In this document: in pieces, positions 1 to 60,510 of the stretch
Layout of the letters: the number at the start of each line of letters is the position of its first letter
Position numbering within the stretch: position 1 is the first letter of the stretch
From: Mustelus asterias
Lineage: Eukaryota
Direction: 5' to 3'
Length of the DNA stretch: 64,000 nt
Assembly (NCBI RefSeq): GCF_964213995.1
Contig: NW_027590119.1
Location: 558,001-622,000 of the forward strand
Program-made: the position numbers and the translations under genes
The notes under the pieces: generated by a model
What the model saw: only the letters and a program-made list of their open reading frames with translations
The model's database searches: none
What the model was told of the DNA's origin: nothing

Positions 1-191
1 GGCTATAATGAATGACGGATATCGTGAACTGAACTATCCATATCTGAAATTGTGCCCTCAGAGTGTCACCATGTTTGATCAACAGGTTTATTTTACGTTG
101 CATTTACACAAACAGAACAGTAAATATGTGAATGCAACTGCACTGAGGTGGTCATGTTCATGGTGCACTAGGCCTGTCCAAACTTAATACA

Positions 192-370
192 GTAAGAAGT
201 GTCACAACACCAGGTTATATTCCAACAGGTTTATTTGGTAGCAAATACCATAAGCTTTCGGAGCAATGCTCCTTCGTCAGATGGAGTGGTCTCTGTTCGG
301 ACTCTTTAACCTGGTGTTGTGAGACTTCTTACTGTGCTTACCCCAGTCCAACGCCGGCATCTCCACATCA
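192..370 (-). mobile_element. Miniature non-autonomous Penelope-like element with inverted ends, carrying a hammerhead ribozyme
   Basis: 12-bp target-site duplication AAACTTAATACA at 180-191 and 371-382; 29-bp inverted repeat 189-217 / 307-335 (1 mismatch); ends match the termini of the large Penelope at 40994-43641. Confidence 0.85.
248..284 (-). ncRNA. Minimal type I hammerhead ribozyme motif (Penelope-associated)
   Basis: Minus strand reads CCAT-CTGACGA-A-GGAGC-ATT-GCTCC-GAAA-GC-TT-ATGG: intact core, 5-bp stem II, 4-bp stem I, palindromic AGCT in place of stem III. Confidence 0.8.
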
Positions 371-814: not shown

Positions 815-850
815 TAATTATCTCCCAGGGGACTGCTGTCATGTATAAAT
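815..850 (+). promoter_or_regulatory. Proximal promoter of GPCR gene 1: homeodomain site, O/E (EBF) site and TATA box
   Basis: TAATTA 815-820, TCCCAGGGGA 823-832 (matches TCCCNNGGGA), TATAAAT 844-850; equivalent elements at the same distances (within 1 nt) from the ATG of the paralog. Confidence 0.65.
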
Positions 851-899
851 TTCACCATTTTTCAGTGCATGCAGAACGCGCTCAGAGCTTCAGATTGAA

Positions 900-969
900 A
901 TGCATGGAATACCAAAAGGCCTGGTGTTTGCGATTTACTATCCGGTCATTGCAGCTATCGGAGTTCCAG
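900..969 (+). CDS. GPR139/GPR142-like GPCR gene 1, coding exon 1 (MHGIPKGLVFAIYYPVIAAIGVP)
   Basis: ATG at 900, phase-1 donor CAG|GTGCTG at 969/970; 18/23 aa identical to paralog exon 1 (27829-27760); intron falls in TM1 before AN, as in GPR139. Confidence 0.85.
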
Positions 970-2536
970 GTGCTGTATTGCAGTTTGTTATCAGCTGTGT
1001 GAATCGTTGTTTAGTTGCATTAACACTGTCAGTTTACCAGTTGTGCATTTCCACGAAACAAATATTCCTTCTCCAATGTAATAGGATATCATTTTCAGAT
1101 TCAAAGGTATATTTTCTTCCGTTTCGTATCAGCATTTATATTTAGCAATATTGACACGCCATTCGTGGTGATAATTTATTCTCTCCATTGCCATATATTT
1201 GTGGTATAAATTGTTTAATTTTCACACTCACGCTCGCCCCTATCCCCTAACAATTTCTTGCTGACAGTATTCGGGCTCATTTGATCAAATCAGATGTGTA
1301 ATATGCCTCATTTATCACAATCACCTCTTGCTGTTTCGGTGCTCTGACTGCAAGTGAATGAGTGTACTGCTATCACAATATCAATGCATTGTTGACAATA
1401 TTATTGGAGATCGATTATCACAAAGTGTTTCGGATGTACAGTTTGTTTCAATATGGCATCAGCATTGCTGGTGCGACTGAATTTTCATGCTCTTTCACCT
1501 TCCACAATGATTCCTAATGTCTCGATGGCATTGTCAGTGACCATCCTCTTCGCTTCGAGGGATAGTCAGTTAAAAGATTTCCAACTGAATTGGTTGAAGG
1601 GACTATGTTTTGCAAATGCATTTTGACAGATACAAGAGCATTGTAAAGATTTCCCCTCCTGTGAACTGTTGGAATGTCCCCTCAGTCACAAAAAAAGTAT
1701 TTCGATCTTTATCCTATCACATTGACTACTTCACAAGGTTGCCCTTCTTCCAAATACGCTTCTGTAGTTTGTTGATTGCGGGATTTCCTTCTGCGCCCAT
1801 CGGCAACAATGTCGAGGATTGTTCTGTTCGCAATTAATTTATCAGCGTTATATTAGTTACCATGACTCCTGGCATCATCTCAGGTAACGTGCAAAATGTA
1901 TATTGCAAATATTCACTATCAGGTTAAACTGAGCATTCGGGTTGTCAGTTCCATTGGTTCTGATCAACGCAGAAGTGATTATTAGTTGTAGGAACAGACA
2001 TAACTCTGCATCCAGTTCAAAGTGTCAGCCGGAATGTAAAAATAATAGTCCATTTAATTCGCATAGTTTGAACAATCCGATTACTGACATTTCCGACAGT
2101 GAAATATTCGATTATTTTTTTATTGCTCCGGGGAACTTCTGATATAATTCAGATATAATCTGTGTTCTTGTTAGATTTCACACTTGTTATTCTTTTTCTA
2201 TTTTGTCGTGATTGAGCCAGTTCAATATTCTGCATGGTTATCTGATGTTGCGTTTTCATATTTGTCTATTCCATTCTTCAGTGATATGATTTTGATTCTG
2301 TGCCTTTATTTGTTACATCCCACGGCAATAATTTCTATTCCGAATTAATTTATCAGCCCCCTTTCGAAACCGAATGATTATTTTGAACTGATAGCGATTT
2401 TCCACAGCGTAAGGGATAAGTTTTTGGCAGCAGGAAGTGATTACTTCACACATAAACTGTAAAGTGGATGATGTCGTTTTTCGTCGATTCATCGATTCAT
2501 ACGCACACACTTTGTCTCTCCCTTTCTATATTACAG

Positions 2537-3453
2537 CTAACTTGGCAGTGATTGTGATCTTCTCTCGAGGACGATGTGGCCTGTCTGGATGTATCACTTA
2601 CTACTTGATGTCCATGGCGGTGACTGATCTCTTGGTCATTATAACAGCTGTAATATTAAACCGGATTGCTGGCATTTATTTCCCGTTCAGTTTCCTGTCT
2701 ATCACGCCGATATGCAGTCTCCGTTCTGCACTCATATTTACAGCAATCGACAGCTCAGCCTGGTTAACGGTCACTTTCACCTTCGATCGATTTGTTGCCA
2801 TTTGTTGCCAGAAGCTGAAATTGAAATATTGCACCGAGAAGACAGCTGCTTGGGTGATAGGAATCGTGGCTGCACTGACCTCCATAAAAAATGCCTTTTT
2901 GTATTTCATATATGAACCTAGATATACAATTAACCAAGTGCCCTGGTTCTGTAATGTAAAGGCATTTTTTTACATCTCAGCAGCTTGGGCTGCATATGAC
3001 TGGATTCGTTGCATTGTAACCCCTTTTCTCCCGTTCATTCTGATTTTACTGCTCAATGCTCTGACTGTCAGATACATCCTTGCGGCAAATGGGGCTCGCA
3101 AGAGGCTCCGAGCCCACGGAAATGGAGAGAATCAGACTGATCCAGAAATGGAAAAGCGGAAACGATCGATTATTTTACTCTTCACCATCTCGGGCAGTTT
3201 CATCTTGTTATATTTGTTATTTTTTATAACTATACTCTACGTCCGAATTGCAAAAGTTACTTACTTTTCAGGTTCCAATTCCAGTGAATCAACATTTACC
3301 CTGGAGGAAAAAGGATTTATGCTTCAGTTTCTGAGTTCTTGCATGAACCCATTCATTTATGCTGGGACACAGAAAAAATTTAGAAATGAGTTAAGAAATG
3401 GGCTGAAATACCCTTTTCGTCAATTTATTAAATTCCTTAGAATCTTAAAATAG
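2537..3453 (+). CDS. GPR139/GPR142-like class A GPCR gene 1, coding exon 2 (spliced product 328 aa, apparently intact)
   Basis: Acceptor tattacag|CT at 2536/2537 joins in frame (70+917=987 nt); seven hydrophobic segments; TM2 MAVTDLLV, TM3 WLTVTFTFDRFVAICC, ECL2 PWFC, TM5 PFLPF, TM7 SSCMNPFIY; no internal stops. Confidence 0.9.
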
Positions 3454-4390: not shown

Positions 4391-4608
4391 CGCACTGCCA
4401 GTCAAATACTTATATTCATAGCTGCAGGACTCATATATATGCCATCACATAATTCCACCGCATCATAACCCTTCTTTTGTCGTTGTTCCCTTAGTCAAAC
4501 AGTTACATTCAGCTAAATGCATGTCCTTACTTAGTCCAGAACAGATGACAATCGATGTCAATGATGACCTTCCGTTTTCAATCTCTTCTCAGCTGCATTC
4601 TCCAATTC

Positions 4609-5225
4609 TTAGCTTTTATTAACAGGGGGTTGGAGTTTAAGAGCCGTGGGGTTATGCTGCAACTGTACAGGACCTTGGTGAGACCACATTTGGAATATTG
4701 TGTGCAGTTCTGGTTACCTCACTATAAGAAGGATGTGGAAGCGCTGGAAAGAGTGCAGAGGAGATTTACCAGGATGCTGCCTGGTTTGGAGGGTAGGTCA
4801 TATGAGGAAAGGTTGAGGGAGCTAGGGCTGTTCTCTCTGGAGCGGAGGAGGCTGAGGGGAGACTTAATAGAGGTGTATAAAATGATGAAGGGGATAGATA
4901 GAGTGAACGTTCAAAGACTATTTCCTCGGGTGGATGGAGCTATTACAAGCGGGCATAACTATAGGGTTCGTGGTGGGAAATACAGGACGGATATCAGAGG
5001 TAGGTTCTTTACGCAGAGAGTGGTTGGGGTGTGGAATGGACTGCCTGCAGTGATAGTGGAGTCAGACACTTTAGAAACATTTAAGCGGTTATTGGATAGG
5101 CACATGGAGCACACCAGGATGATAGGGAGTGGGATAGCTTGATCTTGGTTTCAGATAAAGCTCGGCACAACATCGTGGGCCGAAGGGCCTGTTCTGTGCT
5201 GTACTGTTCTATGTTCTATGTTCTA
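4609..5225 (+). mobile_element. CR1 LINE 3' fragment
   Basis: ORF2 C-terminal motifs LVRPHLEYCVQFW, LERVQRRFTRM, RGDLIEVYK; (gttctat)n tail. Confidence 0.92.
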
Positions 5226-19304: not shown

Positions 19305-20207
19305 CCATAGAACCATAGAACCATAGAACCATAGAAAATTACAGCTCAGAAACAGGCCTTTTGGCCCTTCTTGTCTGTGCCGAACCATTTTTTGCCCAGT
19401 CCCACTGACCCGCACTTGGACCATATCCCTCCACATCCCTCTCATCCATGAACCCGTCCAAGTTTTTCTTAAATGTTAAAAGTGACCCCGCATTTACCAC
19501 TTTATCCGTCAGCTCATTCCACACTCCCACCACTCTCTGCGTGAAGAAGCCCCCCCTAATATTCCCTTTAAACTTTTCTCCTTTCACCCTTAACCCATGC
19601 CCTCTGGTTTTTTTCTCCCCTCGCCTCAGCGGAAAAAGCCTGCTTGCATTCACTCTATCGATACCCATCAAAATCTTATACACCTCTATCAAATCTCCCC
19701 TCAATCTTCTACGCTCCAGGGAATAAAGTCCCTACCTATTCAATCTCTCTCTGTAATTCAGCTTCTCAAGTCCCGGCAACATCCTTGTGAACCTTCTCTG
19801 CACTCTTTCAATCTTATTTACATCCTTCCTGTAACTAGGTGACCAAAACTGTACACAATACTCCAAATTCGGCCTCACCAATGCCTTATATAACCTTACC
19901 ATAACACTCCAACCTTTATACTCGATACTCCGATTTATAAAGGCCAATGTACCAAAGGCACTCTTTACGACCCTATCCACCTGTGACGTCACTTTTAGGG
20001 AATTCTGTACCTGTATTCCCAGATCCCTCTGTTCAACTGCACTGTTCAGAGTCCTACCATTTACCCTGTACGTTCTACTTTGATTTGTCCTTCCAAAGTG
20101 CAATATCTCACACTTGTCTGCGTTAAATTCCATTTGCCATTTTTCAGCCCATTTTTCCAGTTGTTCCAAATCCCTCTGCAAGCTTTGAAAACCTTCCTCA
20201 CTGTCCA
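19305..20207 (-). mobile_element. Young CR1 3' fragment
   Basis: ORFs 19732-20208 and 19339-19704 are consecutive ORF2 C-terminal pieces; (tatggttc)n tail. Confidence 0.92.
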
Positions 20208-21404
20208 TTACTTAACATGCATGAATACAAAATGTTTTATTGGTTTCAAATCTGTGAAGTTTGCTCTGTTTCCTACATTGCAATAGTGAATCCACTTCAA
20301 AATAACTTTATTGGCGAGAAAACACTTCGAGATTCCGGTGATGGTGAAAGGTGCTATGCAAATGAGTGTTTTTTTCTCTGAATCGATGTCACTGATTATT
20401 GTTCTCTATTTTCAACGCAGTAGATCAAACTTCCCCACTCGATCGAGGTCCCTCATTTTCAAAACTCAATATAATCTCCCCTTTGCCTCCAATACTCCAA
20501 TGAGAACAAACACATTCAATCAAATGTTCCCTCACAGCTCATTGCGTTGTGTGTACGTTCAGGAGCAATTCATGAATACTCTCCCCTCATCTCATCAAGA
20601 AATTGACGAAAGTAAGCCAAAAGCTCCAATATGTTCCATTCAGTCATCAATAACATCGTTCACAACTTGTTATTCAGAGCTGCATCTCCTTCCAAACAAT
20701 GCAAAATAATTTCCTCGGGATTTGTTCCGGCTTTATGCCCTCATTTTGAAATGAGATTCGCTTCAATATCTGACGCATGAATATCCTTGATCGTGAATGC
20801 TTTAATACACTTTTTTTTAACTCGCAAATTGATCACATCTCCATTAATTTGTCTCCAATTTGTTCGTATCTGTTCAAGCACACATTTCGAAATGACTTTC
20901 GCTTTAGTATCCAACACAAATTGAATTCCAAAACTGACGGACAAACACTGGGAAACAAATAACTGGGTAACACAAATCCGATTGTGTTCATTTTCAGATT
21001 CACAACACTCAGCCTTTCAATCAAATTGACTAATTTAAAACAGAAATTATTTAGAACGTTTAGGTAACATTTTTGTAAATCACTCGCTCGGGTATTTCGT
21101 AAATGCTGCTCGGAGGTTTCGTGAGCGTTCTCCTGTGCCTGTGCTCAGTGTATTGGGAGGTTTGACCCTGGTTGGAGCATCTTGTGTCCCAGGGATGGGC
21201 AGTAAGCTCTGATTAAAGCTGCAGTCGCCGCTTTCTGCTGGCATCTGGAGATTGAAGAATGTTGGGTAAAATCGTGCTGCTGCTCCCTGTTTCACTCACT
21301 GTAGAGGTGATTAAAGTATGTGATTATCTAAATTGCGATATATTTATAGATATGCAGTTGGTGAGGTGTAGACACATGATAGGGCTAGTTGCTTTCTCAT
21401 TATA

Positions 21405-22828: not shown

Positions 22829-23687
22829 TTAGAACATAGAACATAGAACAGTACAGCAACAGAATAGGCCCTTCGGCCCACGATGTTGTGCCGAGCTTTA
22901 TCTGAAACCAAGATCAAGCTATCCCACTCCCTATCATCCTGGTGTGCTCCATGTGCCTATCCAATATCCGCTTAAATGTTCCTAAAGTGTCTCACTCCAA
23001 TATCACTGCAGGCAGTCCATTCCACACCCCAACCACTCTCTGGGTAAAGAACCTACCTCTGATATCTTTCCTATATCTCCCACCATGAACCCTATAGTTA
23101 TGCCCCCTTGTAATAGCTCCATCCACCCGAGGAAATAGTCTTTGAACGCTCACTCTATCTATCCCCTTCATCATTTTATAAACCTCTATTAAGTCTCCCC
23201 TCAGCCTCCTCCGCTCCAGAGAGAACAGCCCTAGCTCCCTCAACCTTTCCTCATAAGACCTACCCTCCAAACCAGGCAGCATCCTGGTAAATCTCCTCTG
23301 CACTCTTTCCAGCGCTTCCACATCCTTCTTATAGTGAGGTGACCAGAACTGCACGCAATATTCCAAATGTGGTCTCACCAAGGTCCTGTACAGTTGCAGC
23401 ATAACACCACGGCTCTTAAACTCCAACCCCCTGTTAATAAAAGCTAACACACTATAGGCCTTCTTCACAGCTCTATCCACTTGAGTGGCAACCTTTAGTG
23501 ATCTGCGGGTATGGACCGCAAGATCTCTCTGTTCCTCCACAGTCTTCAGAGCCCTACCTTTGATCCTGTAATCCACATTTAAATTAGTCCTACCAAAATG
23601 AATCACCTCACATTGATCACGATTAAACTCCATTTCCCATTTTTCAGCCCAGCTTTGCATCCTATCTATGCCTCTTTGCAGTCTACA
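22829..23687 (-). mobile_element. Young CR1 3' fragment (subfamily of the 4609 and 39958 copies)
   Basis: ORF 22992-23774 carries ORF2 C-terminal motifs; (gttctat)n tail. Confidence 0.92.
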
Positions 23688-24630
23688 ACATTGGACGCAC
23701 TGCATAGGTATCTCTGCCGCCCCCATGACTGTTGCCATGCTATTCCCTCGAGGCACAGGGAATAACATTTGCAATTCATGTCATGTTTTATTTTGATCAT
23801 AATTTAAATAACTTAACAAAAGGACGTAATATATATTTCACGGAATTCTAAATTTGCATTGGGTCCCCGCATAAATAAATGGATTAATGCAGGAACTCAA
23901 AAGTTGCAGCATTAGTCCACTTTCTTCAAGAATATAATTGGATTTGCTGAAACTTGAACCTTCTAAATAAATAACGCTCGCAATTCGGACATAAAGGAAA
24001 GTTACAACAGCGAGCAAATATAATAGGATGAAACTGGCTGAGATGGCAAATAGTAAAATAATGGACTTATTCCTTTTCTCCATCTCTGGATCATTCTGAC
24101 TCTCTGCAATGCTCTGGGCTCGGAGTCTTCTGCGGGCTCGATTGGCTGCAACAATATGGTTGACAGTTAGAACATTGAGCATCAAAATAAGGACAAATGG
24201 GAGACAAGGTATTAAAATGGCATTTATGCTGCCATATGCGATCCATCCGGATGAAGTATTAAAATACTGATGTTAACTTGCAGTACCGAGGAATATTGTT
24301 AATGATAATGGAAGGTTCACAAGCAAAGAACAAGGGAATTTTTTTAGCACAGTGAACAAAACAGACAGTTCCTATCACCAAAGCTGAAATTTTCTTTTTG
24401 CAGTATTTTGTTTTTAGCCTTTGGCAACAAATAGCTATAAATCGATCGAAGGTGAAAGCGACTGTTAACCAGACAGAAGAATCCCTAACACCATATATCA
24501 GCACAAGACTGAGAGCAAAGGCTGGAGTGATTGAGAGGAAACTGAATGGAAAATATACACCCAAAATGCGATTTATTATCACCGCCAGGATCATGACCAG
24601 GAGATCTGTCACTGCCATGGACATCAAGTA

Positions 24631-25316
24631 CAAAGAACAAAGAACAGTACAGCACAGGAAACAGGCCCTTCGGCCCTCCAAGCCTGTGCCGCTCCTTGGT
24701 CCAACTAGACCAATCGTTTGTATCCCTCCATTCCCAGGCTGCTCATGTGACTATCCAGGTAAGTCTTAAACGATGTCAGCGTGCCTGCCTCCACCACCCT
24801 ACTTGGCAGCGCATTCCAGGCCCCCACCACCCTCTGTGTAAAAAACGTCCCTCTGATGTCTGAGTTATACTTCGCCCCTCTCAGCTTGAGCCCGTGACCC
24901 CTCGTGATCGTCACCTCCGACCTGGGAAAAAGCTTCCCACTGTTCACCCTATCTATACCCTTCATAATCTTGTATACCTCTATTAGATCTCCCCTCATTC
25001 TCCGTCTTTCCAAGGAGAACAACCCCAGTCTACCCAATCTCTCCTCATAGCTAAGACCCTCCATACCAGGCAACATCCTGGTAAACCTTCTCTGCCCTCT
25101 CTCCAATGCCTCCACGTCCTTCTGGTAGTGCGGCGACCAGAACTGGACGCAGTACTCCAAATGTGGCCTAACCAGCGTTCTATACAGCTGCATCATCAGA
25201 CTCCAGCTTTTATACTCTATACCCCGTCCTATAAAGGCAAGCATACCATATGCCTTCTTCACCACCTTCTCCACCTGTGTTGCCACCTTCAAGGATTTGT
25301 GGACTTGCACACCTAG
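24631..25316 (-). mobile_element. Young CR1 3' fragment inserted in frame in exon 2 of GPCR gene 2
   Basis: ORF 24705-25478 switches from GPCR (SGCITYY) to CR1 (LGVQVHKSLKV); GPCR resumes YLMSMAVTD after the (ttctttg) tail. Confidence 0.93.
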
Positions 25317-26504
25317 GTAGTAGGTGATGCATCCGGAGAGACCACATCTTCCTCGTGACAGGATCACAATTACTGCCAGATTAGCTGTGAGAGGGAAACA
25401 TACCGAGTGAAAATGCAATCGTGATAAAGGAATGCTGAAGAAACATTTTTGAAAAATTTTCAGATTGGACATCAGCAAACTAAAAGCAGAGCCAGCATTT
25501 CAGGTTTGTGATCTAACGGTTTCATTGGAGAAAACGGATGCTAATGTTTAATAAATCCACAATACTGCTCTGTACTCCCAGGAAGAATGCCGGCTCAGTC
25601 CTACAGTAAACACGTTACTTCATACTTTGTGACTCAGTTAAATGAAAGACAATGAGTTATTTTCGCATTCACTGAGGCAGAACACGTTTTGGCTGGAATA
25701 TTGGGGAGAATTAAAAAAGAAAACGCAATAATAGAGCGACATCTGAATTGAGCAGCAAGGCATCAGAAGGTGTTTTCTGGGAAAAGATACTAAATGCTTT
25801 CGATGCGAACAAATCCTGGAAAACACATCAATGCGCAGAAGCATTTTGGGACAAAAAGTACGTGACCAGGAACTCTTGAACTGTAATGATCAGAAGGTAA
25901 AGGAATAGTGATTCACGGGAACAAGAAAAGCTACCAACATATCGGAAATATTCATTGTAAGTTGGACGTCTATCGCTTCACAGTGAAACGGCATGTTTTC
26001 AAAACGTATTTTACCACTGAGAGAATTATACACTGCCCAGGATGCCATATATTTTCTCAGCCGATAAACTGAGGACCCATGCGATAAAATGCGACACAGA
26101 TTCAAGAAGTGCACACTGATCTTATTCCAGCTCAATGTAAATAAGCATAAATAAAATAATGCAGTAGCTGTGTCTAGAATATGTTACAAGTATGGTAATT
26201 GTGTGATGATTCATACAAGGTAACATCGCTGGATAAACATTAGAAATGCAGATGCATCGTGGTGATATTGCGGTACTTCCCTCCTAATAATCATGTAAAT
26301 GAACAGAAGGACACAGGAAATGAGATATGATAACTGTAAATGGGAACAATTTCTAACCATGTGGTCACAGGAACATTATATATTGTCAAAGTATAAAACA
26401 GAAACCAGAAATGGGAAGAAATTATGATAAAGGAAAGAAATAACACCGTTAAAAGGAAGCAAATCCAGCAATCGTGCAAGTAAATAAAGAACACAGATCA
26501 AATA

Positions 26505-27490
26505 AGCTTACAAGACAGGAACAGGCCCTTGGGTCCTCCAGGCCTACGCCGACCACGCTGTTCATCTGAACTAAAACCCCTGACTATATTCCTTTATTCC
26601 CAACCATTCATGTACTTGTCAAGACGCCCCTGAAAAGTCACTATCGTATCTGCTTCCACTTACTCCTCCAGTAGTGAGTTCCAGGCACCCACCACTCTCT
26701 GTGTAAGAACATACCTCGTACATATCCTTTTAAACCATGCTCCTCGCACCTTAAACCTATGCCCCCTTGTGATTGACTCTTAAACCCTGGGAAAAAGCTT
26801 CTCACTATCCACTCCTTCCATTTTCTTCATAATCTTGTCGACTTCTATCAGGTCGCCCCTCAACCTGCGTCGTTTCAGTGAGAACAAACCAGCTTTCTCC
26901 AACCTCTCCTCATAGCTAATGCTTTCCATACCAGGCAACATCATGGTAGGTATTTTCTTTACCCTCTTCAAAGCCTCCACACCCTTCTGCCAGTGTGGCG
27001 ACCAGAAAGAGACACAAGATTCCAAGTGCGGCCTAACTAAGGTTCCAGAAAGCTGCAATATTACTTGCGGATTTTAAACTCAATGCCCCGGCTGATGAAG
27101 GCAAGCACGCCGCATGTCTTCTTGACTACCTTCTCTATCTGCGTTGCCACTTTCAGTAACCTGTGTACCAGTACACCCAGACCCCTCTTTCTATCGATAC
27201 TCTTAAAGGCTCTACCATGTACTGGATATTTTCCATCTGTATTAGACCTTCCAAAATCAAGTACGTCACATTTGTCCGGATTAAACTCCATCTGCCATCT
27301 CTCCGCCCAAGTCTCGAACCGAATTATTTCCTGCTGTATCCCCTGACGGTCATCACTGCTGTCTGCAATTCCACCAACCTTTGTGACGTCCACATAAATA
27401 CAAATCAAACCAGTTATATTATTCTCCAAATCATGTGCATATATTACAAACAGCAATGGTCCCAGCACTGATCCCTGAGGAACACCTGTA
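26505..27490 (-). mobile_element. CR1 3' fragment in the intron of GPCR gene 2
   Basis: RT motifs GVPQGSVLGPLLF, WQMEFNPDKC; stops present. Confidence 0.88.
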
Positions 27491-27879
27491 GCAACAGCCT
27501 TGGAATTAATTAGATTGGTAAAGTGGAACATTAAACAGAAAATTGTTATTTCTTAAAATTCAACGACTATATTGCAAAATGCGATAGAAAGGGAAGTTGT
27601 CGCAGTGAAATTAACAGATCATGTTGGATATGAATGCCAGTATGATAAAAAAAATAATAACACTTCCAGGGAACGGGGGCGGTGATGAGCTGAAATCAGA
27701 AAGCAATAGCAGCGATTGACAATGATTTCCGTACCGAATACTTCATGAAATGTGCTTACCTGGAATCCCGATCACTGCAAGCACGGGATAGTAAATGACA
27801 AAGACCAACCCTTTTGGTAATCCATGCATTTCTGTCAGCAGCTGCCAGTTTATTCTGCTCGACAATTAGAGATTGACAG

Positions 27880-27915
27880 ATATATAACCTAGGCCAGGCT
27901 TCAGGGAGTTCATTT
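27880..27915 (-). promoter_or_regulatory. Decayed homeodomain-O/E-TATA promoter of GPCR gene 2
   Basis: AAATGA 27915-27910, 2 nt, TCCCTGAAGC 27907-27898, TATATAT 27886-27880; O/E at -78 and TATA at -57 versus -77 and -56 in gene 1. Confidence 0.55.
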
Positions 27916-35246: not shown

Positions 35247-38200
35247 CATAAGAACATAAGAACATAAGAAATAGGAGCAGGAGTAGGCCATCTCGCCCCT
35301 CGAGCCTGCCCCGCCATTCAATAAGATCATGGCTGATCTGACGTGGATCAGTACCACTTACCCGCCTGATCCCCATAACCCTTAATTCCCTTACCGATCA
35401 GGAATCCATCCATCCGCGCTTTAAACATATTCAGCGAGGTAGCCTCCACCACCTCAGTGGGCAGAGAATTCCAGAGATTCACCAGCCTCTGGGAGAAGAA
35501 GTTCCTCCTCAACTCTGTCTTAAACCGACCCCCCTTTATTTTGAGGCGGTGTCCTCTAGTTTTAACTTCCTTACTAAGTGGAAAGAATCTCTCCGCCTCC
35601 ACCCTATCCAGCACCCGCATTATCTTATAAGTCTCCATAAGATCCCCCCTCATCCTTCTAAACTCCAACGAGTACAAACCCAATCTCCTCAGCCTCTCCT
35701 CATAATCCAAACCCCTCATCTCCGGTATCAACCTGGTGAACCTTCTCTGCACTCCCTCCAATGCCAATATATCTATCCTTCCTCATAGAAGGGGACCAAT
35801 ACTGCACACAGTATTCCAGCTGCGGCCTCACCAATGCCCTGTCCAGGTGCATCAAGACATCCCTGCTTTTATATTCTATCCCCCTCGCGATATAGGCCAA
35901 CATCCCATTTGCCTTCTTGATCACCTGTTGTACTTGCAGACTGGGCTTTTGCGTCTCATGCACAAGGACCCCCAGGTCCCTTTGCACGGTAGCATGTTTT
36001 AATTTGTTTCCATTGAGATAGTAATCCCATTTGTTATTATTTCCTTCAAAGTGTATAACCTCGCATTTCTCAACGTTATACTCCATTTGCCATATCCTCG
36101 CCCACTCACTCAGCCTGTCCAAATCTCTCTGCAGATCTTCTCCGTCCTCCACACGATTCACTTTTCCACTTATCTTTGTGTCATCTGCAAACTTCGTTAC
36201 CCTACACTCCGTCCCCTCCTCCAGATCATCTATATAAATGCTAAATAGTTGCGGCCCGAGTACCGATCCCTGCGGCACGCCACTAGTTACCTTCCTCCAA
36301 CCGGAAAAACACCCATTTATTCCGACTCTTTGCTTCCTGTCGGATAGCCAGTCCCCAGTCCACTTTAACACACTACCCCCAACTCCGTGTGCCCTAATCT
36401 TCTTCAGCAGCCTTTTATGGGGGACCTTATCAAACGCCTTTTGGAAATCCAAAAACACCGCATCCACCGGTTCTCCTCCATCAACCGCCCTAGTCACATC
36501 TTCATAAAAATCCAACATGTTCATCAAGCACGACTTTCCACTCATGAATCCATGCTGCGTCTGATTGATTGAACCATTTCTATCCAGATGCCCTGCTATC
36601 TCCTCTTTAATAATGGATTCCAGCATTTTCCCTACTACAGACGTTAAGCTGACCGGCCTATAGTTACCCGCCTTTTGTCTCCTTCCTTTTTTAAACAGCG
36701 GCGTAACATTAGCCGTTTTCCAATCAACCGGCACTACCCCAGAATGCAACGAGTTTTGATAAATAATCACTAACGCATCCACTATTACCTCTGACATTTC
36801 TTTCAATACCCTGGGATGCATTCCATCCGGACCCGGGGACTTGTCCACCTTCAGTCCCATTAGTCTACCCAGCACTGCCTCTCTGGTAACATTAATTGTA
36901 TTAAGTATTTCTCCTGCTGCCAACCCTCTATCGTTAATATTTGGCAAACTATTTGTGTCCTCCACCGTGAAGACCGACACAAAAAACTTATTTAAAGACT
37001 CAGCCATATCCTCATTTCCCACTATTAACTCCCCCCTCTCGTCCTCCAAGGGTCCAACATTCACTCTAGCCAGTCTATTCCTTTTTATATATTTATAAAA
37101 ACTTTTACTTTCATTATTTATATTAATTGCTAGCCTAACTTCATAGTCTATCCTTCCTTTCTTTATCGCTTTCTTAGTCTCTCTTTGTTGTTTCTTAAAT
37201 TTTTCCCAATCACTTGTTTCTCCACTATTTTTGGCCACTCTGTACGCAGCTGTTTTTATTTTAATACTCTCCTTTATTTCCTTCGTTATCCTCGGCTGGT
37301 TCTCCCTTTTCTTACAATCCTTGTTTTTTGCTGGAATATATTTTTGCTGAGAACTGAAAAGGATCTCCTTAAAAATCCTCCACTGTTCCTCAGCTATCCT
37401 ACCTGCCAGCCTGCTCTCCCAGTCTACCTTAGCCAATTCATCCCTCATCCTATCATATTTCCCTCTATCCAAACAGAGGACACTGGTTTGGGACCAAACT
37501 TTCTCCTCTTCCATCTGAATCAGAAATTCGACCATATTGTGGTCACTAGACCCAAGAGGGTCCTTCACAATAAGATCCTTAATTCTACCTACCTCGTTAC
37601 ACAATACCAGATCCAAAATAGCTCGTTCCCTCGTCGGTTCCGTAACATGCTGTTCAAGGAAACTATCCCGACAGCATTCTAAGAACTCTTCCTCCATTCC
37701 ACCCTTACCGACTTGAGTCTGCCAGTAAATGTGCATGTTGAAGTCCCCCATGATTATTGCCATTCCGTTTTTACACGCATCCCTTATCTGCTTGTTTATA
37801 GCCCTCCCTACCTCAACATTATTATTTGGGGGCCTATATACCACACCTACTAGTGTCTTTCTCCCTCTACTATTCCTCATCTCTACCCATAATGATTCCA
37901 CGTTTTGTTCCTCAGAGCCTATGTCATCCCTCAGCACTCCCCTGATATTATCTCTTATTAATAGCGCGACCCCACCACCTTTTCCTTCCTGTCTATTCTT
38001 CCTAAACGCCTGATACCCCTGGATATTCATCTCCCAGTCCTGGTCACCTTTCAGCCACGTTTCTGTAATGGCCACTTGATCGTACCCACTTGTGCTGATT
38101 TGCACCATCAACTCATTTACCTTGTTCCGAATGTTTCGTGCATTCAGGCAAAGTGTCCTTATTCCAGCTTTTATCTGGACCCGCTTTGCTGAGTCGCGAA

Positions 38201-38372
38201 CAGCCTCTCCCTCTACTCCCTTATCTAAATTACCGCCTTCATTCACTTGCACCCTCTCCTCTACCATTAATTTTGTAATTCCCCTTACCCCTGCATCCTC
38301 CCCCCCCCCCCCCCCCCCCCCCCCATCAATTAGTTCCTTGATCCTAGTCAACTCTTCTAGCTCCCCTCCTCT
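35247..38372 (-). mobile_element. Young CR1 with essentially complete ORF2 (APE endonuclease + RT), one frameshift
   Basis: 883-aa ORF (LCLNARNI, AITETW, GDFN, SDH, YRPVSLTS, FADD) continues in ORF 35348-35767 after an apparent 4-nt insertion near 35770; TSD TGGAGAA 35240-35246 / 38373-38379; (ttatgttc)n tail. Confidence 0.93.
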
Positions 38373-50933: not shown

Positions 50934-51006
50934 TGTTTCTACCTGATTTCGAAGCGGGGACTGTTTGCTTGTTTGGCGCATGTGTTAACCACTACACTAC
51001 AGAAAC
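50934..51006 (-). pseudogene. tRNA-Val pseudogene
   Basis: Equivalent position in unit 6; many substitutions. Confidence 0.75.
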
Positions 51007-52166
51007 AGCTTCAAGCACGCTAGAGCAAATCTGCCTGTCTGCAATGTTCAACTACGTTGTGTTGCTGCAGGTTCCGATGGTGAGACTGAGAGCCCATGTC
51101 ACTGAATTCAGGAAGATAATCGTTACTTTCAATCTGATTGCTCAATTTATCTCAAACATCAAAATTTTAAAGCGTTCGTCCCGCAATTATCTAAGGCAGC
51201 AATGATTTCTGCCCATTCATTAATGCATTATTCTCATCTTTCTTCGAATAATCTCAACCAACTGTACTCAGTAATGAAAGCAAATTACTGCGGATGCTGG
51301 AATCGGAAACCAAAAGAGAAAATGCTGGAAAATCTCAGAAGGTCTGACAGCAAATGTAAGGAGTGAAAAGGGCTGTCGTTTCAAATCCAGATGACACTTT
51401 GTCAAGGCTCATTTTACAATTGTACTCAGTATTTGTTTCAACATTTAGCATCAATGCATTATTTAACACACGTCTTCATTATGAATTGAATATCTCTGAA
51501 ATTGAATATCATTGAATTGCAAATATAACTGACCAACAGAAGGAATCGAATCACCGGGTAATACAGATCGCAATTTTGATATTGACCATCGCCAGCTTTT
51601 ACACAGAGTTATCTTCATTTGAATGGAAGAGATTCAAGAATTATCTGTTCGTGACACTTGAGCCTTTTTTATTATGGGCGTGAAACATTCAGGCGCATAA
51701 ATTCTGGCCATTAATAGGAAAGTCCAGTAGAACCGCACTGACTCTCGATTCCCTCATCTGTCTGAGTTTTTTTCTCTCCCTATTTCTTTGTTGTGAAGAA
51801 CGATTTCAGAAAAGAATCTTGTGGGAAATGAGTGTCATTTCCTGTAGATTACTTGTGTCAGTCTTCTGGAGCACACACTACTATTAGATATGTTTCAGAT
51901 GGTGATTAACCATATTAGTCTGCACCTATAAACCCATTAAATTCTGTCGTAGACTGAACGAGATGCGAATATGTGTCACAATCGAAACGTTTCTTTCCTG
52001 CCAGCGCGTCAAAAAATGAATCAGCATTTCTTATTTTATAGAAAACATTTGAGGCCCAGGTTTAGGGCAGAGACCATATGGCTGTAACATCGAGATTCGG
52101 AAGATGTTCAGCAATGAACTGAAATGATACAGATTTCTCTCCCCCTACATGAGAAAGCTCAATGAA

Positions 52167-52239
52167 TTTTTCTGCTCGGTTTCGGACCGGGGACGTCTCG
52201 CGTGTGAAGTGAACGTGATCACCACTTCACTACAGAAAC
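52167..52239 (-). pseudogene. tRNA-Val(CAC) pseudogene
   Basis: Anticodon loop TTCACAC; degenerate stems. Confidence 0.7.
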
Positions 52240-53470
52240 AGCTGATAAGTGACGAGAGCAAATCGGCCTGTTTGCAATGTTCAACTGTGCTGTAGTGCTG
52301 CACGTTCAAATGGTTAGACTTACAGCCCTCCTCTCCTCTGCCCCCCCCCCACCCCCCCGCCGCCCCCCCCCCCCCCCCATGTGACTTGTTTCGGGAAGAT
52401 AACCGCGACTTTCAACCTGATTACTCAACTTATCTTGAACTTCAAAACTTAGAAGCGTTCGTCTGCCAAATATCTGAGGGAGCAATGATTTCTGCTCATT
52501 CATTAATGCATCATTCTCATCTTCCTTCGAATAATCTCAACCAATTGTACTCAGTCATAAAAGCCAGTTACCGCAGATGCTGGAATCTGAAACCAAAAGA
52601 TAAAATGCTGGAAAATCTCACAAGATCTGGCAGCATCTGTAAGGAGCGAAAAGAGCTGGCGTTTCGAGTCAAGATGATACTTTGTCAAAGCTCATTGTGC
52701 AATTGTACTCAGTATTTGTTTCAATATTTCATATCAATGCATTATTTAACACATATGTCTTCATTATGAATTGAATATCTCTGAAATTGAATATCACTGA
52801 ATTGCAAACATAACTGACCAACAAAGGAAATCGAGTCACCGGGTAATACAGATCACAATTTTTTTTGATTGACCATAGTCAGCTTTTAAACAAAGTCAAC
52901 TACATTTAAATGGAAGAGTTTGAAGAATTGTCTGTTAGTGACAGTTGACCCTTTTTTATTATGGGCGTGAAACTTTCAGGCGCATAAATTCCGGCCATCT
53001 ATTGGAAAGTCCACTAGATCCGCATTAAGTCTCGATTTCCACATCTGTCTGAGTGTTTTCTTTTTCCTATTTCTTTGTTATGAAGAACGGTTTCAATAGA
53101 GATTCTTCTGGGAAATGTGCGCCATTTCCTCTAGTTCACTTACAGTAGCACTTGCGTCAGTCTTCTGGAGCACATACTACGATTAGAAAAGTTTCAGATG
53201 GTGAATAACGATGTTAGTCTGCACCTATAAACCCATTAAATTCTGTTGTAGACTGAACGTGATGCGAATATGTACACGGTGTCAAAATCGAAACGTTTCT
53301 TTCCTATCAGTGCATCAAAAAACTATCAGCATTTCTTACTTAGCAGAAAGAATTTGTGGCCAAGGTCAGAACAAAGATAATATGGCTGTCACATCGAGAT
53401 TCGGATAATGTTCAGCAACGAACTGAAATCACACAGGTTTCCCTCACCCTGCATGGGAAAGCTTAATGAA

Positions 53471-53543
53471 TGTTTCTACTCAGTTTCAAACCCGGGGCCG
53501 TTTGCGTGTGAGGCGAACATGATAGCACCTACACTACAGAAAC
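53471..53543 (-). pseudogene. tRNA-Val(CAC) pseudogene
   Basis: TTCGC-CTCACAC-GCAAA; degenerate D and T arms. Confidence 0.7.
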
Positions 53544-59400: not shown

Positions 59401-60510
59401 GTCATGAAGTCATAGAGGTTAACAGCATGGATCCAGGCCCTTCGGCCCAACTTGTCCATGCCGCCCTTTTTTAAAAAAATCCAAAGCTAGTCCCAATCGC
59501 CCGCATTTGACCCATATCCCTCTATACCCATCTTACCCATGTAACTGTCGAAATGCTTTTTAAAAGACAAAATTGTACCCGCTTCTACCACTACCTCTGG
59601 CAGCTTGTTCCAGACACTCACCATCCTCTGTGTGAAAAAAACTGCCCCTCTGGACACTTTTGCATCTCTCCCCTCTCACCTTAAACCTATGCCCTCTAGT
59701 TTTAGACTCCCCTACCTTTGGGAAAATATATTGACTGTTTAGATGATCCATGCCCCTCATTATTTTATAGACCTCTATAAGATCACCCCTCAACCTTCTA
59801 CGCTCCGGAGCAAAATTTCCCAGTCTATCCAGCCTCTCCTTATAACTCAAACCATCAAGTCTCGGTAGCATCCTAGTAAATCTTTCCTGCACTCTTTCTA
59901 GTTTAATAATGTCCTTTCTATAATAGGGTGAACAGAACTGTACACAGTATTCCAAGTGTAGCCTTACCAATGTCTTGTACAACTTCAACAAGACGTCCCA
60001 ACCCCTGTATTCAATGTTCTGAGCAATGAAACCAAGCACGCTGAATGTCTTCTTCACCACTCTGTCCACCTGTGGCTCCACTTTCAAGGAGCTATGAACC
60101 TGTACCTCTAGATCTCTTTGCTCTGTAACTCTTCTCAATGACCTACCATTAACTGAGTAAGTCCTGCCCTGGTTCAAACTACCAAAATGCATAACCTCGC
60201 ATTTATCTAAATTAAACTCAATCTGCCATTCGTGAGCCCACTGGCCCAATTTATCAAGATCCCGTTGCAATCCGAGATAACCTTCTTCACTGTCCACTGT
60301 GCCACCAATCTTCGTGTCATCTGCAAACTTCCTAAATATGCCTCCTTTTTTCTCACCCAAATCATTAATATAAATGACAAATAACAATGGATCCAGCACC
60401 GATCCCTGAGGCTCACCGCTGGTCACAGGCCCCCAGTTTAAAAAGCAACCCTCTACAACCGCCCTGTGGCTTCTGTCATCAAGCCAATTTTGTGTCAATT
60501 TAGCTACCTC
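59401..60510 (-). mobile_element. CR1 3' fragment inserted in the V exon of pseudogene A
   Basis: 312-aa ORF with RT C-terminal motifs (KFADDTK); TSD-like tctaYgt at 59394-59400 / 60530-60536. Confidence 0.92.

What the first reader, a model, noticed from the sequence alone, without database searches (positions are those of the whole stretch)
815..3453. GPR139-like receptor with an olfactory-type homeodomain + O/E promoter: candidate unrecognised shark chemoreceptor family
Seen: TAATTA-TC-TCCCAGGGGA (815-832) then TATAAAT (844), at -85/-77/-56 from the ATG of an intact 7TM gene with an N terminus of only about 7 residues. The pseudogene paralog has AAATGA-AC-TCCCTGAAGC and TATATAT at -86/-78/-57: same layout, decayed. 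Established: adjacent homeodomain (Lhx2-type) and O/E (EBF) sites are the hallmark of vertebrate olfactory receptor promoters and enhancers; mammalian GPR139 and GPR142 respond to aromatic amino acids such as L-Trp; cartilaginous fish have very small OR, TAAR and V1R repertoires. Inference: these duplicated GPR139-like genes may be expressed in olfactory sensory neurons as amino-acid or peptide odorant receptors. EBF is also a B-cell and general neuronal factor, so other expression sites remain possible.
Basis: partly seen in the sequence, partly recalled or inferred. Interest (0 to 1): 0.88.

Follow-up and report, generated by a model that had tools for sequence, protein, structure and literature searches.

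The report
Shark orphan receptor with olfactory-style promoter
An intact gene from a very large, shark-expanded family of orphan receptors has, just upstream, the same pair of DNA motifs that switch on smell-receptor genes in other vertebrates, so the family may be an overlooked set of shark chemical sensors, but no expression data could be obtained.

Summary
TAATTA (815-820), TCCCAGGGGA (823-832) and TATAAAT (844-850) lie 85/77/56 bases upstream of the ATG at 900. The gene is intact and has two exons (900-969, 2537-3453). It is a 7TM gene of Mustelus asterias.

It belongs to a very large shark family labelled "probable GPR139": 2059 database proteins at E<=1e-10, and all 119 named proteins among the best 120 come from sharks. 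The GPR139 label is only a weak best hit. A family profile scores the TRH receptor above GPR139, and the polar GPR139 agonist residues are missing.

The motif combination occurs once in the 64 kb. DNA contigs put the motif stretch at about 4-5x single-copy depth while its flanks are single-copy, so close paralogs share it. In every contig laid, however, base 830 is A, so the O/E site is imperfect. The old pseudogene copy keeps the layout in a decayed form.

Variation in the family concentrates in the outer halves of the helices and at pocket positions, as in chemoreceptor families.

Olfactory use is plausible (about 0.35-0.4) but unproven.

First readers noted the same cassette on eight other pieces of this genome. 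I did not check those notes.

The parts
815..820 (+). Palindromic homeodomain-type core TAATTA, 85 bases upstream of the ATG
   Evidence: Read. Unchanged in the 95%-identical paralog or allele contig, X3 record 17. TAATTA occurs 18 times in the window, so on its own it is not informative.
823..832 (+). O/E (EBF)-type palindrome TCCCAGGGGA, 2 bases downstream of the homeodomain core
   Evidence: The only TCCCNNGGGA in the 64 kb. Base 830 reads A in all contigs of four DNA runs. Depth at 830-852 is 134.5 (X1) and 220.4 (X2), against 30.7 and 41.9 at 748-797.
844..850 (+). TATA box TATAAAT, 56 bases upstream of the ATG. The predicted start of transcription is near 870-880 (inferred).
   Evidence: Read. 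Paralog variants at 842, 852 and 856 flank it but do not touch it. The pseudogene has TATATAT at the matching offset.
900..969 (+). Coding exon 1: MHGIPKGLVFAIYYPVIAAIGVP plus 1 base (short N-terminus and most of TM1); donor GT at 970
   Evidence: The same peptide begins 86 of the 120 best homologs.
970..2536 (+). Phase-1 intron (GT..AG), 1567 bases
   Evidence: DNA contigs are at single-copy depth over most of it. A paralog contig diverges from the window just upstream of 2531 (loose ends).
1862..1883 (+). Alternative first exon (MTPGIIS) used by the public gene model P0001; probably spurious
   Evidence: P0001 begins MTPGIISANLAV. That model has only 7 residues before the ANL that ends TM1 in the family, so it lacks most of TM1.
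2537..3453 (+). Coding exon 2: rest of TM1 to the C-terminus, stop TAG at 3451-3453
   Evidence: Pfam 7tm_1, E 5.1e-23, 82.3 bits against a cut-off of 30.5. 100% match to P0001 of Mustelus asterias.
27880..27915 (-). Decayed promoter of the pseudogene paralog: AAATGA-AC-TCCCTGAAGC, then TATATAT
   Evidence: Ungapped identity to the intact promoter (-110..-40) is 52.9% at offset -1, against 27.1% +/- 5.4% at 190 other offsets.
27760..27829 (-). Pseudogene exon 1 (MHGLPKGLVFVIYYPVLAVIGIP)
23846..25388 (-). Pseudogene exon 2. It is split by a retroelement insertion of about 680 bases (about 25313-24631). It also has a frameshift near 24262 and an early stop after KFRIP.

Best explanation
Shown: this is an intact two-exon gene for a rhodopsin-class receptor with an extracellular N-terminus of about 6 residues. 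It belongs to a very large, fast-diversifying orphan family that is greatly expanded in sharks and only distantly related to GPR139 and the TRH receptor.

Shown in part: the roughly 90 bases before the ATG form a conserved proximal promoter, in the order homeodomain core, 2-base gap, O/E-type site, 11-base gap, TATA box. Close paralogs share this stretch almost unchanged while the DNA on either side has diverged.

Inferred: transcription starts about 25-30 bases after the TATA box, giving a 5' UTR of about 20-30 bases. A LIM-homeodomain factor of the Lhx2 type and an EBF (O/E) dimer would bind side by side about 50 bases upstream of that start. That would restrict expression to cells that hold both factors, most likely chemosensory neurons of the olfactory epithelium, each perhaps expressing one or a few family members. 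The variable pocket would let the paralogs bind different ligands. Nothing here shows that those ligands are amino acids.
For: Gene model.

Family size:
- 2059 proteins at E<=1e-10 among 6038 candidates. By my hand count of the listing, the best 120 comprise 119 named proteins from 11 shark species (73 from Heterodontus francisci) and 1 unnamed JGI protein.
- 132 clusters at 50% identity reach E<=1e-30.
- Contig depth over 2733-2839 is about 55x single-copy in two runs. The tool warns that depth is not a copy number.

Promoter:
- The composite occurs once in the window.
- Depth over 830-852 is 4.4x (X1) and 5.3x (X2) the depth at 748-797 and 997-1014.
- Identity to the pseudogene promoter is 52.9% against a 27% background, while blastn aligns nothing outside the exons.

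Diversification:
- Mean column entropy is 0.90 bits in the outer halves of the helices and 0.49 in the inner halves (Mann-Whitney p = 7e-7).
- The most variable helix positions include 3.29, 3.32, 3.35, 4.57, 5.42, 5.43, 6.51 and 7.37.

Background from passages I read: O/E, homeodomain and TATA motifs are typical of OR promoters (PMC12547500). Juxtaposed Lhx2/Ebf sites bind cooperatively (PMC5608512). Sharks have very few OR and TAAR genes and rely on V2Rs (PMC11979771; PMC10116579).
Against: There is no expression evidence of any kind.

I could not fetch DNA of any paralog outside the window. Family-wide positional conservation therefore rests on read depth, one pseudogene and unchecked first-reader notes.

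The common form of the O/E site has a mismatch (A at 830), and the pseudogene site matches only 5 of the 8 specified bases.

EBF and homeodomain factors also act in B cells and in many neurons.

Catshark olfactory neurons appear to be all microvillous, TRPC2/Go-positive cells without the ciliated type that expresses class A ORs and TAARs elsewhere. The 50 most specific genes of the catshark 'brain & olfactory epithelium' library include no GPCR. That argues only weakly against olfactory use, because a receptor expressed in sparse cells would not rank among them.

Outer-half variability is common to many GPCR families.
Confidence: 0.42

Rival explanations
1. The promoter is real and conserved, but it drives expression outside the nose: in other sensory or central neurons, solitary chemosensory or taste-related cells, or EBF-positive blood cells. 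The family then serves as peptide, neuromodulator or immune-type receptors that expanded in sharks.
For: The closest solved relatives are peptide receptors (TRH receptor 59 bits, GPR139 55 bits, PrRP receptor 50 bits), and single-sequence hits include CCR5 and CCR2. Mammalian GPR139 is a CNS receptor. Catshark ORs, TAARs and ORAs are mostly expressed outside the nose.
Against: By general knowledge, not tested here, a family of this size with radical changes at pocket positions among close paralogs is unusual for receptors of endogenous ligands. The motif pair matches the olfactory grammar.
Confidence: 0.3
2. The resemblance to homeodomain plus O/E sites is coincidental. The conserved block before the TATA box is a family-specific core promoter bound by other factors, or it is kept similar by gene conversion together with exon 1.
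For: The palindrome is imperfect in all read contigs and decayed in the pseudogene. TAATTA is common, with 18 copies in the window. The motif was recognised after the fact. The high-depth stretch runs on into exon 1, so conversion or coding-linked conservation could carry the promoter along.
Against: A relaxed composite that allows the A-830 form is still unique in 64 kb, against 0.04 (HD + O/E) and 0.0 (with TATA) per shuffled window. Conservation begins between 797 and 830, exactly at the element.
Confidence: 0.2
3. The gene is a non-functional or barely expressed recent duplicate in a decaying cluster, and the promoter motifs are relics.
For: The neighbouring copy is a pseudogene broken by a retroelement. 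The region is full of retroelement fragments. The public model of this gene misses exon 1, which would fit a lack of transcript support.
Against: The reading frame is open over 327 codons with canonical splice sites and all family-invariant residues that I checked, including DRF, NPFIY and the 3.25/ECL2 cysteines.
Confidence: 0.08

Closest known systems
Vertebrate odorant-receptor gene promoters and the Lhx2/Ebf 'composite motif' of OR enhancers (Greek Islands)
   Same: A homeodomain core and an O/E-type site sit next to each other close to a TATA box in an AT-rich upstream region (GC 0.37 over 601-900). O/E, homeodomain and TBP motifs are described for OR promoters, and juxtaposed sites for OR enhancers.
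   Different: In mouse the tight juxtaposition marks distant enhancers and is said not to occur in most OR promoters. Here it sits 12-30 bases from a TATA box. The exact spacing of the mouse composite is given only in figures and supplements, which I could not see. The downstream gene is not an OR (Pfam 7tm_1 only, no 7tm_4 hit).
GPR139 / GPR142 (aromatic amino-acid and peptide-activated orphan receptors)
   Same: It is the name given by the annotation. It is the best full-length human match for the single sequence. TM1 shares the signature YY...G(L/V)PAN..(V/I)ILS, and there is an Asn after TM5's Pro region (alignment). GPR139 also has a two-exon gene.
   Different: The score is only 27.6 bits (single sequence) or 55 bits (profile), whereas true GPR139 orthologs are 70% identical between human and zebrafish. 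The residues aligned to E108, W241, R244 and N271 are I/N, Y, F/L/Y and M. Another protein labelled 'probable GPR139' (P0270, a caecilian) has no PDB match at E<=1e-20, so the label is used broadly.
Thyrotropin-releasing hormone receptor and other peptide receptors of class A
   Same: The TRH receptor is the top solved-structure match of the family profile (59.3 bits, E 3.5e-15).
   Different: The similarity is at the general class A level. The family lacks Pro 6.50 and mostly has Tyr for Trp 6.48. Its N-terminus is about 6 residues long.
Lineage-specific class A chemoreceptor expansions (TAAR/TARL, V1R/ORA and the like)
   Same: Many paralogs and pseudogenes, and variation focused on the ligand pocket.
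   Different: There is no detectable specific sequence kinship, and no expression data.

Membership tests
Rhodopsin-class (class A) GPCR | Match to Pfam 7tm_1 above its gathering score | tested here: met
   82.3 bits against a cut-off of 30.5, E 5.1e-23, covering profile positions 2-260 of 260.
Rhodopsin-class (class A) GPCR | Seven helices with the D/E-R-Y-like and NPxxY motifs | tested here: met
   DRF and NPFIY are present. The AlphaFold model of homolog P0003 shows 7 long helices plus helix 8, but at low confidence (pLDDT 50.8).
GPR139/GPR142 subfamily | Close sequence similarity to GPR139 (orthologs 70-96% identical among vertebrates) | tested here: not met
   27.6 bits, E 1.9e-5 for the single sequence. 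55 bits for the profile, below the TRH receptor.
GPR139/GPR142 subfamily | Agonist-pocket residues E108, F109, H187, W241, R244, N271 | tested here: not met
   The aligned family residues (55 sequences) are: I 23/N 22; Y 46/F 5; H 26/R 9/L 8; Y 40/W 9; F 26/L 11/Y 9/R 2; M 53. The window protein has I, F, R, Y, F and M (my mapping).
GPR139/GPR142 subfamily | Two-exon gene | tested here: inconclusive
   There are two coding exons here, and GPR139 is said to have two exons. I did not compare the intron positions.
Odorant receptor (OR) family proper | Match to the OR-specific profile (Pfam 7tm_4) | tested here: not met
   Only 7tm_1 was reported at E<=0.01.
Olfactory chemoreceptor gene (functional class) | Expression in olfactory sensory neurons | not testable with these tools
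   No RNA run was found. The four runs laid are DNA.
Olfactory chemoreceptor gene (functional class) | Large multigene family with pseudogenes and lineage-specific expansion | tested here: met
Olfactory chemoreceptor gene (functional class) | Homeodomain and O/E motifs near the transcription start, conserved across paralogs | tested here: inconclusive
   Present here, shared by close paralogs judging from depth, and decayed in the pseudogene. DNA of other paralogs could not be fetched.

The most novel reading that the evidence does not exclude
This family supplies the 'missing' odorant receptors of sharks. On this reading it is a clade of dozens to hundreds of class A genes per genome, expressed sparsely in the microvillous olfactory neurons and controlled by the same Lhx2/Ebf grammar that governs OR choice in bony vertebrates. 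That grammar would then be older than, and independent of, the OR family itself, and the shark nose would not be a purely V2R organ.
Probability: 0.3. Interest if true: 0.9.

Novelty: new variant of a known kind. Interest (0 to 1): 0.68.

Why it matters
[quoted passage not shown] A class A family with dozens to hundreds of variable members and an olfactory-type promoter would change that picture.

It would also show that the homeodomain/O-E control logic can serve a receptor family unrelated to ORs. It would provide a short, testable cis-element as well.

Even if expression turns out to be elsewhere, this large expansion, annotated only as 'probable GPR139', did not appear in any of my five literature searches. 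Its misleading name and frequently mis-modelled first exon are also worth correcting.

Tried and rejected
Expression: the look-up of sequencing runs returned four runs, none recorded as RNA. I suspected that the two small runs (share 0.33-0.34) might be RNA covering exons only. Read laying showed contigs in the intron, Nextera adapter ends and no splice joints, so they are DNA.

Paralog promoters:
- A degenerate exon-1 DNA pattern found nothing in metagenome contigs.
- The protein search of the same collection gave 59 pattern matches, but none was a relative.
- The genome-contig collection holds only bacteria and archaea, so I did not use it.

Mouse composite motif: I could not compare its spacing with this element. 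No sequence is given in the text of PMC5608512 or PMC7804114. The logos and probe lists are in figures and supplements, and supplements are closed.

Other steps:
- The bacterial-type promoter scan is irrelevant to a eukaryotic gene, so I ignored it.
- The AlphaFold model of P0003 had pLDDT 50.8, so I ran no fold search on it.
- I considered that P0270 might be a true GPR139 ortholog to use as an outgroup. It is not.
- The ESM Atlas look-up only repeated the annotation names and pointed to invertebrate FMRFamide-receptor-like clusters. I treat that as a lead only.
- The supplements of PMC11979771 (tissue expression tables, dataset S8) may already hold expression values for catshark members, but I could not see them.
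Full report
**The observation**

Reading the window confirms every coordinate. TAATTA is at 815-820, followed by TC, TCCCAGGGGA at 823-832, TATAAAT at 844-850 and ATG at 900.

The ATG opens a 70-base exon encoding MHGIPKGLVFAIYYPVIAAIGVP. It ends at a GT donor at 970. An AG acceptor at 2535-2536 leads into an open 304-codon exon that ends with TAG at 3451-3453.

The minus-strand paralog has AAATGA-AC-TCCCTGAAGC and TATATAT at -86, -78 and -57 from its ATG at 27829. It is a pseudogene. Exon 2 is split by a retroelement of about 680 bases right after CITYYL. It also has a frameshift near 24262 and an early stop. A tblastn of a full-length homolog against the window found only these two copies.

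**Is it more than chance?**

- TCCCNNGGGA occurs once in the 64 kb, at this site (expected 0.74).
- The 18-base composite with up to two mismatches occurs once (expected 0.42).
- A deliberately relaxed composite is again found only at 815. It requires a TAAT[TG][AG] core, 0-6 bases, TCCCNNG[AG]G[AG], 5-30 bases, and then a TATA-like heptamer. In 300 block shuffles it occurred 0.0 times per window, and the first two elements alone occurred 0.04 times.
- The pattern was chosen after it was seen, so the real test is conservation.

**What the gene is**

Exon 2 matches Pfam 7tm_1 at 82.3 bits. It is 100% identical to a Mustelus asterias protein named 'putative G-protein coupled receptor 139' (P0001).

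That public model starts with MTPGIIS, encoded at 1862-1883, and so lacks most of TM1. The other 26 lack it, and 4 of those are truncated fragments.

**The family**

- The search returned 2059 proteins at E<=1e-10 among 6038 candidates.
- By my hand count of that listing, the best 120 (66-100% identity) are 119 proteins from 11 shark species plus one unnamed metagenome protein. Of these, 73 come from Heterodontus francisci and 16 from Rhincodon typus.
- A profile of 55 full-length members (A2) finds 132 clusters at 50% identity with E<=1e-30 and 618 with E<=1e-10.
- Sampled weaker hits come from a stingray (268 bits), salamanders (193 bits), coelacanth (184 bits) and teleosts (168 and 119 bits), in small clusters of 1-5 members.
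- The clade is therefore old in jawed vertebrates, and the large expansion appears to be in sharks. Only ten clusters were sampled.
- In the reads, the TM3/DRF stretch (2733-2839) has a contig depth of 1700 and 2621 against baselines of about 30 and 47. This suggests dozens of copies at 95% identity or more in this species. The tool warns that depth is not a copy number.

**Is it 'GPR139-like'?**

Only loosely.

- With the single sequence, human GPR139 scores 27.6 bits (E 1.9e-5), in the same range as CCR5, the CCK-A receptor and galanin receptor 2.
- With the family profile, the TRH receptor scores 59.3 bits, GPR139 55.2 and the PrRP receptor 50.1.
- The printed alignment shows a real resemblance in TM1 (YY...G.PAN...ILS).
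- Of the agonist-pocket residues listed in the GPR139 review (E108, F109, H187, W241, R244, N271; passages), the family keeps only an aromatic residue at the F109 position (Y 46, F 5 of 55) and His at the H187 position in 26 of 55.
- The polar residues are replaced: I/N for E108, F/L/Y for R244 and M for N271.
- True GPR139 orthologs are 70% identical between human and zebrafish.
- Another protein labelled 'probable GPR139' (P0270) has no PDB match at E<=1e-20 and is 26% identical to P0003. The label is a catch-all.
- L-Trp/L-Phe agonism cannot be carried over to this family.

**Diversification**

On alignment A2, the outer halves of the helices have a mean column entropy of 0.90 bits and the inner halves 0.49 bits (99 against 106 positions; Mann-Whitney p = 7e-7).

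I placed the helix anchors from the conserved class A motifs, using recalled numbering conventions. They agree with the helices of the AlphaFold model, which has low confidence.

The most variable helix positions are 3.29, 5.43, 4.57, 3.35, 5.42, 6.51, 7.37 and 3.32. The changes are radical among proteins that are 70-90% identical: for example R/H/C/V at 5.43, H/R/L/F at 5.42 and I/N/S/M at 3.32. This fits ligand-driven diversification, but it is not specific to chemoreceptors.

**Is the promoter conserved?**

Three lines of evidence bear on this, none complete.

1. Read depth. All four runs that hold the stretch are DNA: they cover the intron and show no joints.
   - In X1 and X2 the depth is 30.7 and 41.9 at 748-797, 134.5 and 220.4 at 830-852, 161.3 and 253.6 at 906, and 31.2 and 42.9 at 997-1014.
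   - The stretch from the O/E site through the TATA box into exon 1 is thus shared almost identically by about four to five copies. The DNA upstream of about 800, and the intron, are single-copy at the 95% threshold.
   - Conservation begins between 797 and 830, at the element.

2. Variant contigs. These differ from the window at 830, 842, 852 and 856. Where they cover it, TAATTA, TCCC and TATAAAT are intact.
   - One contig (X3 record 17, 14 differences over 700-996) has 8 of its 12 listed differences in 748-797, 3 in 801-899 and 1 in exon 1.
   - All contigs read A at 830, so the common form is TCCCAGGAGA and the perfect palindrome was not seen in any run.

3. The pseudogene. Its exon 2 is only 70% identical at the DNA level, and blastn aligns nothing outside the exons. 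Even so, the ungapped identity of -110..-40 is 52.9% at an offset of one base, against 27.1% +/- 5.4% at 190 other offsets. The densest matches are at ATC.AAT.A.CTCCC and TATA.AT. Its homeodomain core and the second O/E half-site are lost, and another TAATTA lies 18 bases further upstream, at 27933-27928.

Eight first-reader notes on other pieces of this genome describe the same cassette in front of GPR139-like genes. They are unchecked leads from readers of the same kind, and I could not see their DNA.

**Comparison with what is known**

- In the passages I read, OR promoters are AT-rich and carry O/E, homeodomain and TBP motifs within a few hundred bases of the start (PMC12547500).
- Lhx2 and Ebf sites placed directly side by side form the 'composite motif' of the OR enhancers. 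[quoted passage not shown] It also works in the class I J element (PMC7804114).
- The element here therefore looks more like an enhancer-type composite placed inside a TATA promoter. I could not compare its spacing with the mouse logo, because the logo appears only in figures and supplements.
- On the shark side, the catshark has 2 ORs plus a few OR-like genes, and few TAARs and ORAs, mostly not expressed in the nose. It relies on about 32-34 V2Rs.
- Catshark olfactory neurons all appear to be microvillous and TRPC2/Go-positive (PMC11979771; PMC10116579).
- The top 50 genes of the catshark 'brain & olfactory epithelium' library include no GPCR. That says little about receptors expressed in sparse cells.
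- None of five full-text searches found a paper on this shark family. The 'cartography' paper lists extra coelacanth, gar and fish subtypes next to GPR139/142. These may be the bony-fish relatives.

**Verdict**

The sequence observation is right, and the promoter block is very probably functional and shared across the family. The family has the evolutionary profile of a chemoreceptor family.

The step from motif to olfactory expression is inference. I put it at about 0.35-0.4 for olfactory neurons and somewhat higher for chemosensory cells of any kind. The link to amino-acid ligands through GPR139 is not supported.

The decisive data are paralog promoters genome-wide and tissue RNA.

Noticed in passing
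window 44694-53543, minus strand: An array of ten tRNA-Val genes (eight with anticodon AAC, two with CAC). They occur partly as pairs about 100 bases apart that recur roughly every 2.6-2.7 kb, which suggests a tandemly duplicated unit.
   Followed up: partly
window 1862-1883 and protein P0001: The public gene model for this locus uses a 7-residue alternative first exon (MTPGIIS) and lacks most of TM1. Of the 120 best homologs, 26 likewise lack the canonical exon-1 peptide (4 of them are truncated fragments). The first exon is probably mis-annotated across the family.
   Followed up: partly
window 830: The assembly has G, but every contig laid from four DNA runs (three samples) has A. This could be a private allele, paralog-only coverage or a consensus error.
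   Followed up: partly
window 4555-5142, 19732-20208, 22992-23774, 24705-25310, 27061-27531, 35700-38351, 40078-40755, 59560-60498: There are many fragments of reverse-transcriptase-type retroelements that share a C-terminal motif (...LEYCVQFWSP.Y.KD...RVQRRFTRMLPG...). One is an 883-residue ORF, and one copy interrupts the pseudogene's exon 2.
   Followed up: no
I did not check this. From memory, OR genes flank the TCR alpha locus in mammals, so the neighbourhood may deserve a look.
   Followed up: no
window 185-345: An inverted repeat is visible in the sequence: gtaagaagtgtcacaacaccaggtta and its complement are about 100 bases apart. It looks like a small foldback or SINE-type element upstream of the gene.
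   Followed up: no
family alignment A2 (homologs, not the window): The family has Tyr in place of Trp 6.48 in 40 of 55 members, and P0003 has Leu where class A receptors have Pro 6.50. An intracellular-loop-1 motif RCGLS.C with two cysteines is invariant, and position 4.50 is variable (R/W/V). These are unusual features for class A receptors.
   Followed up: partly
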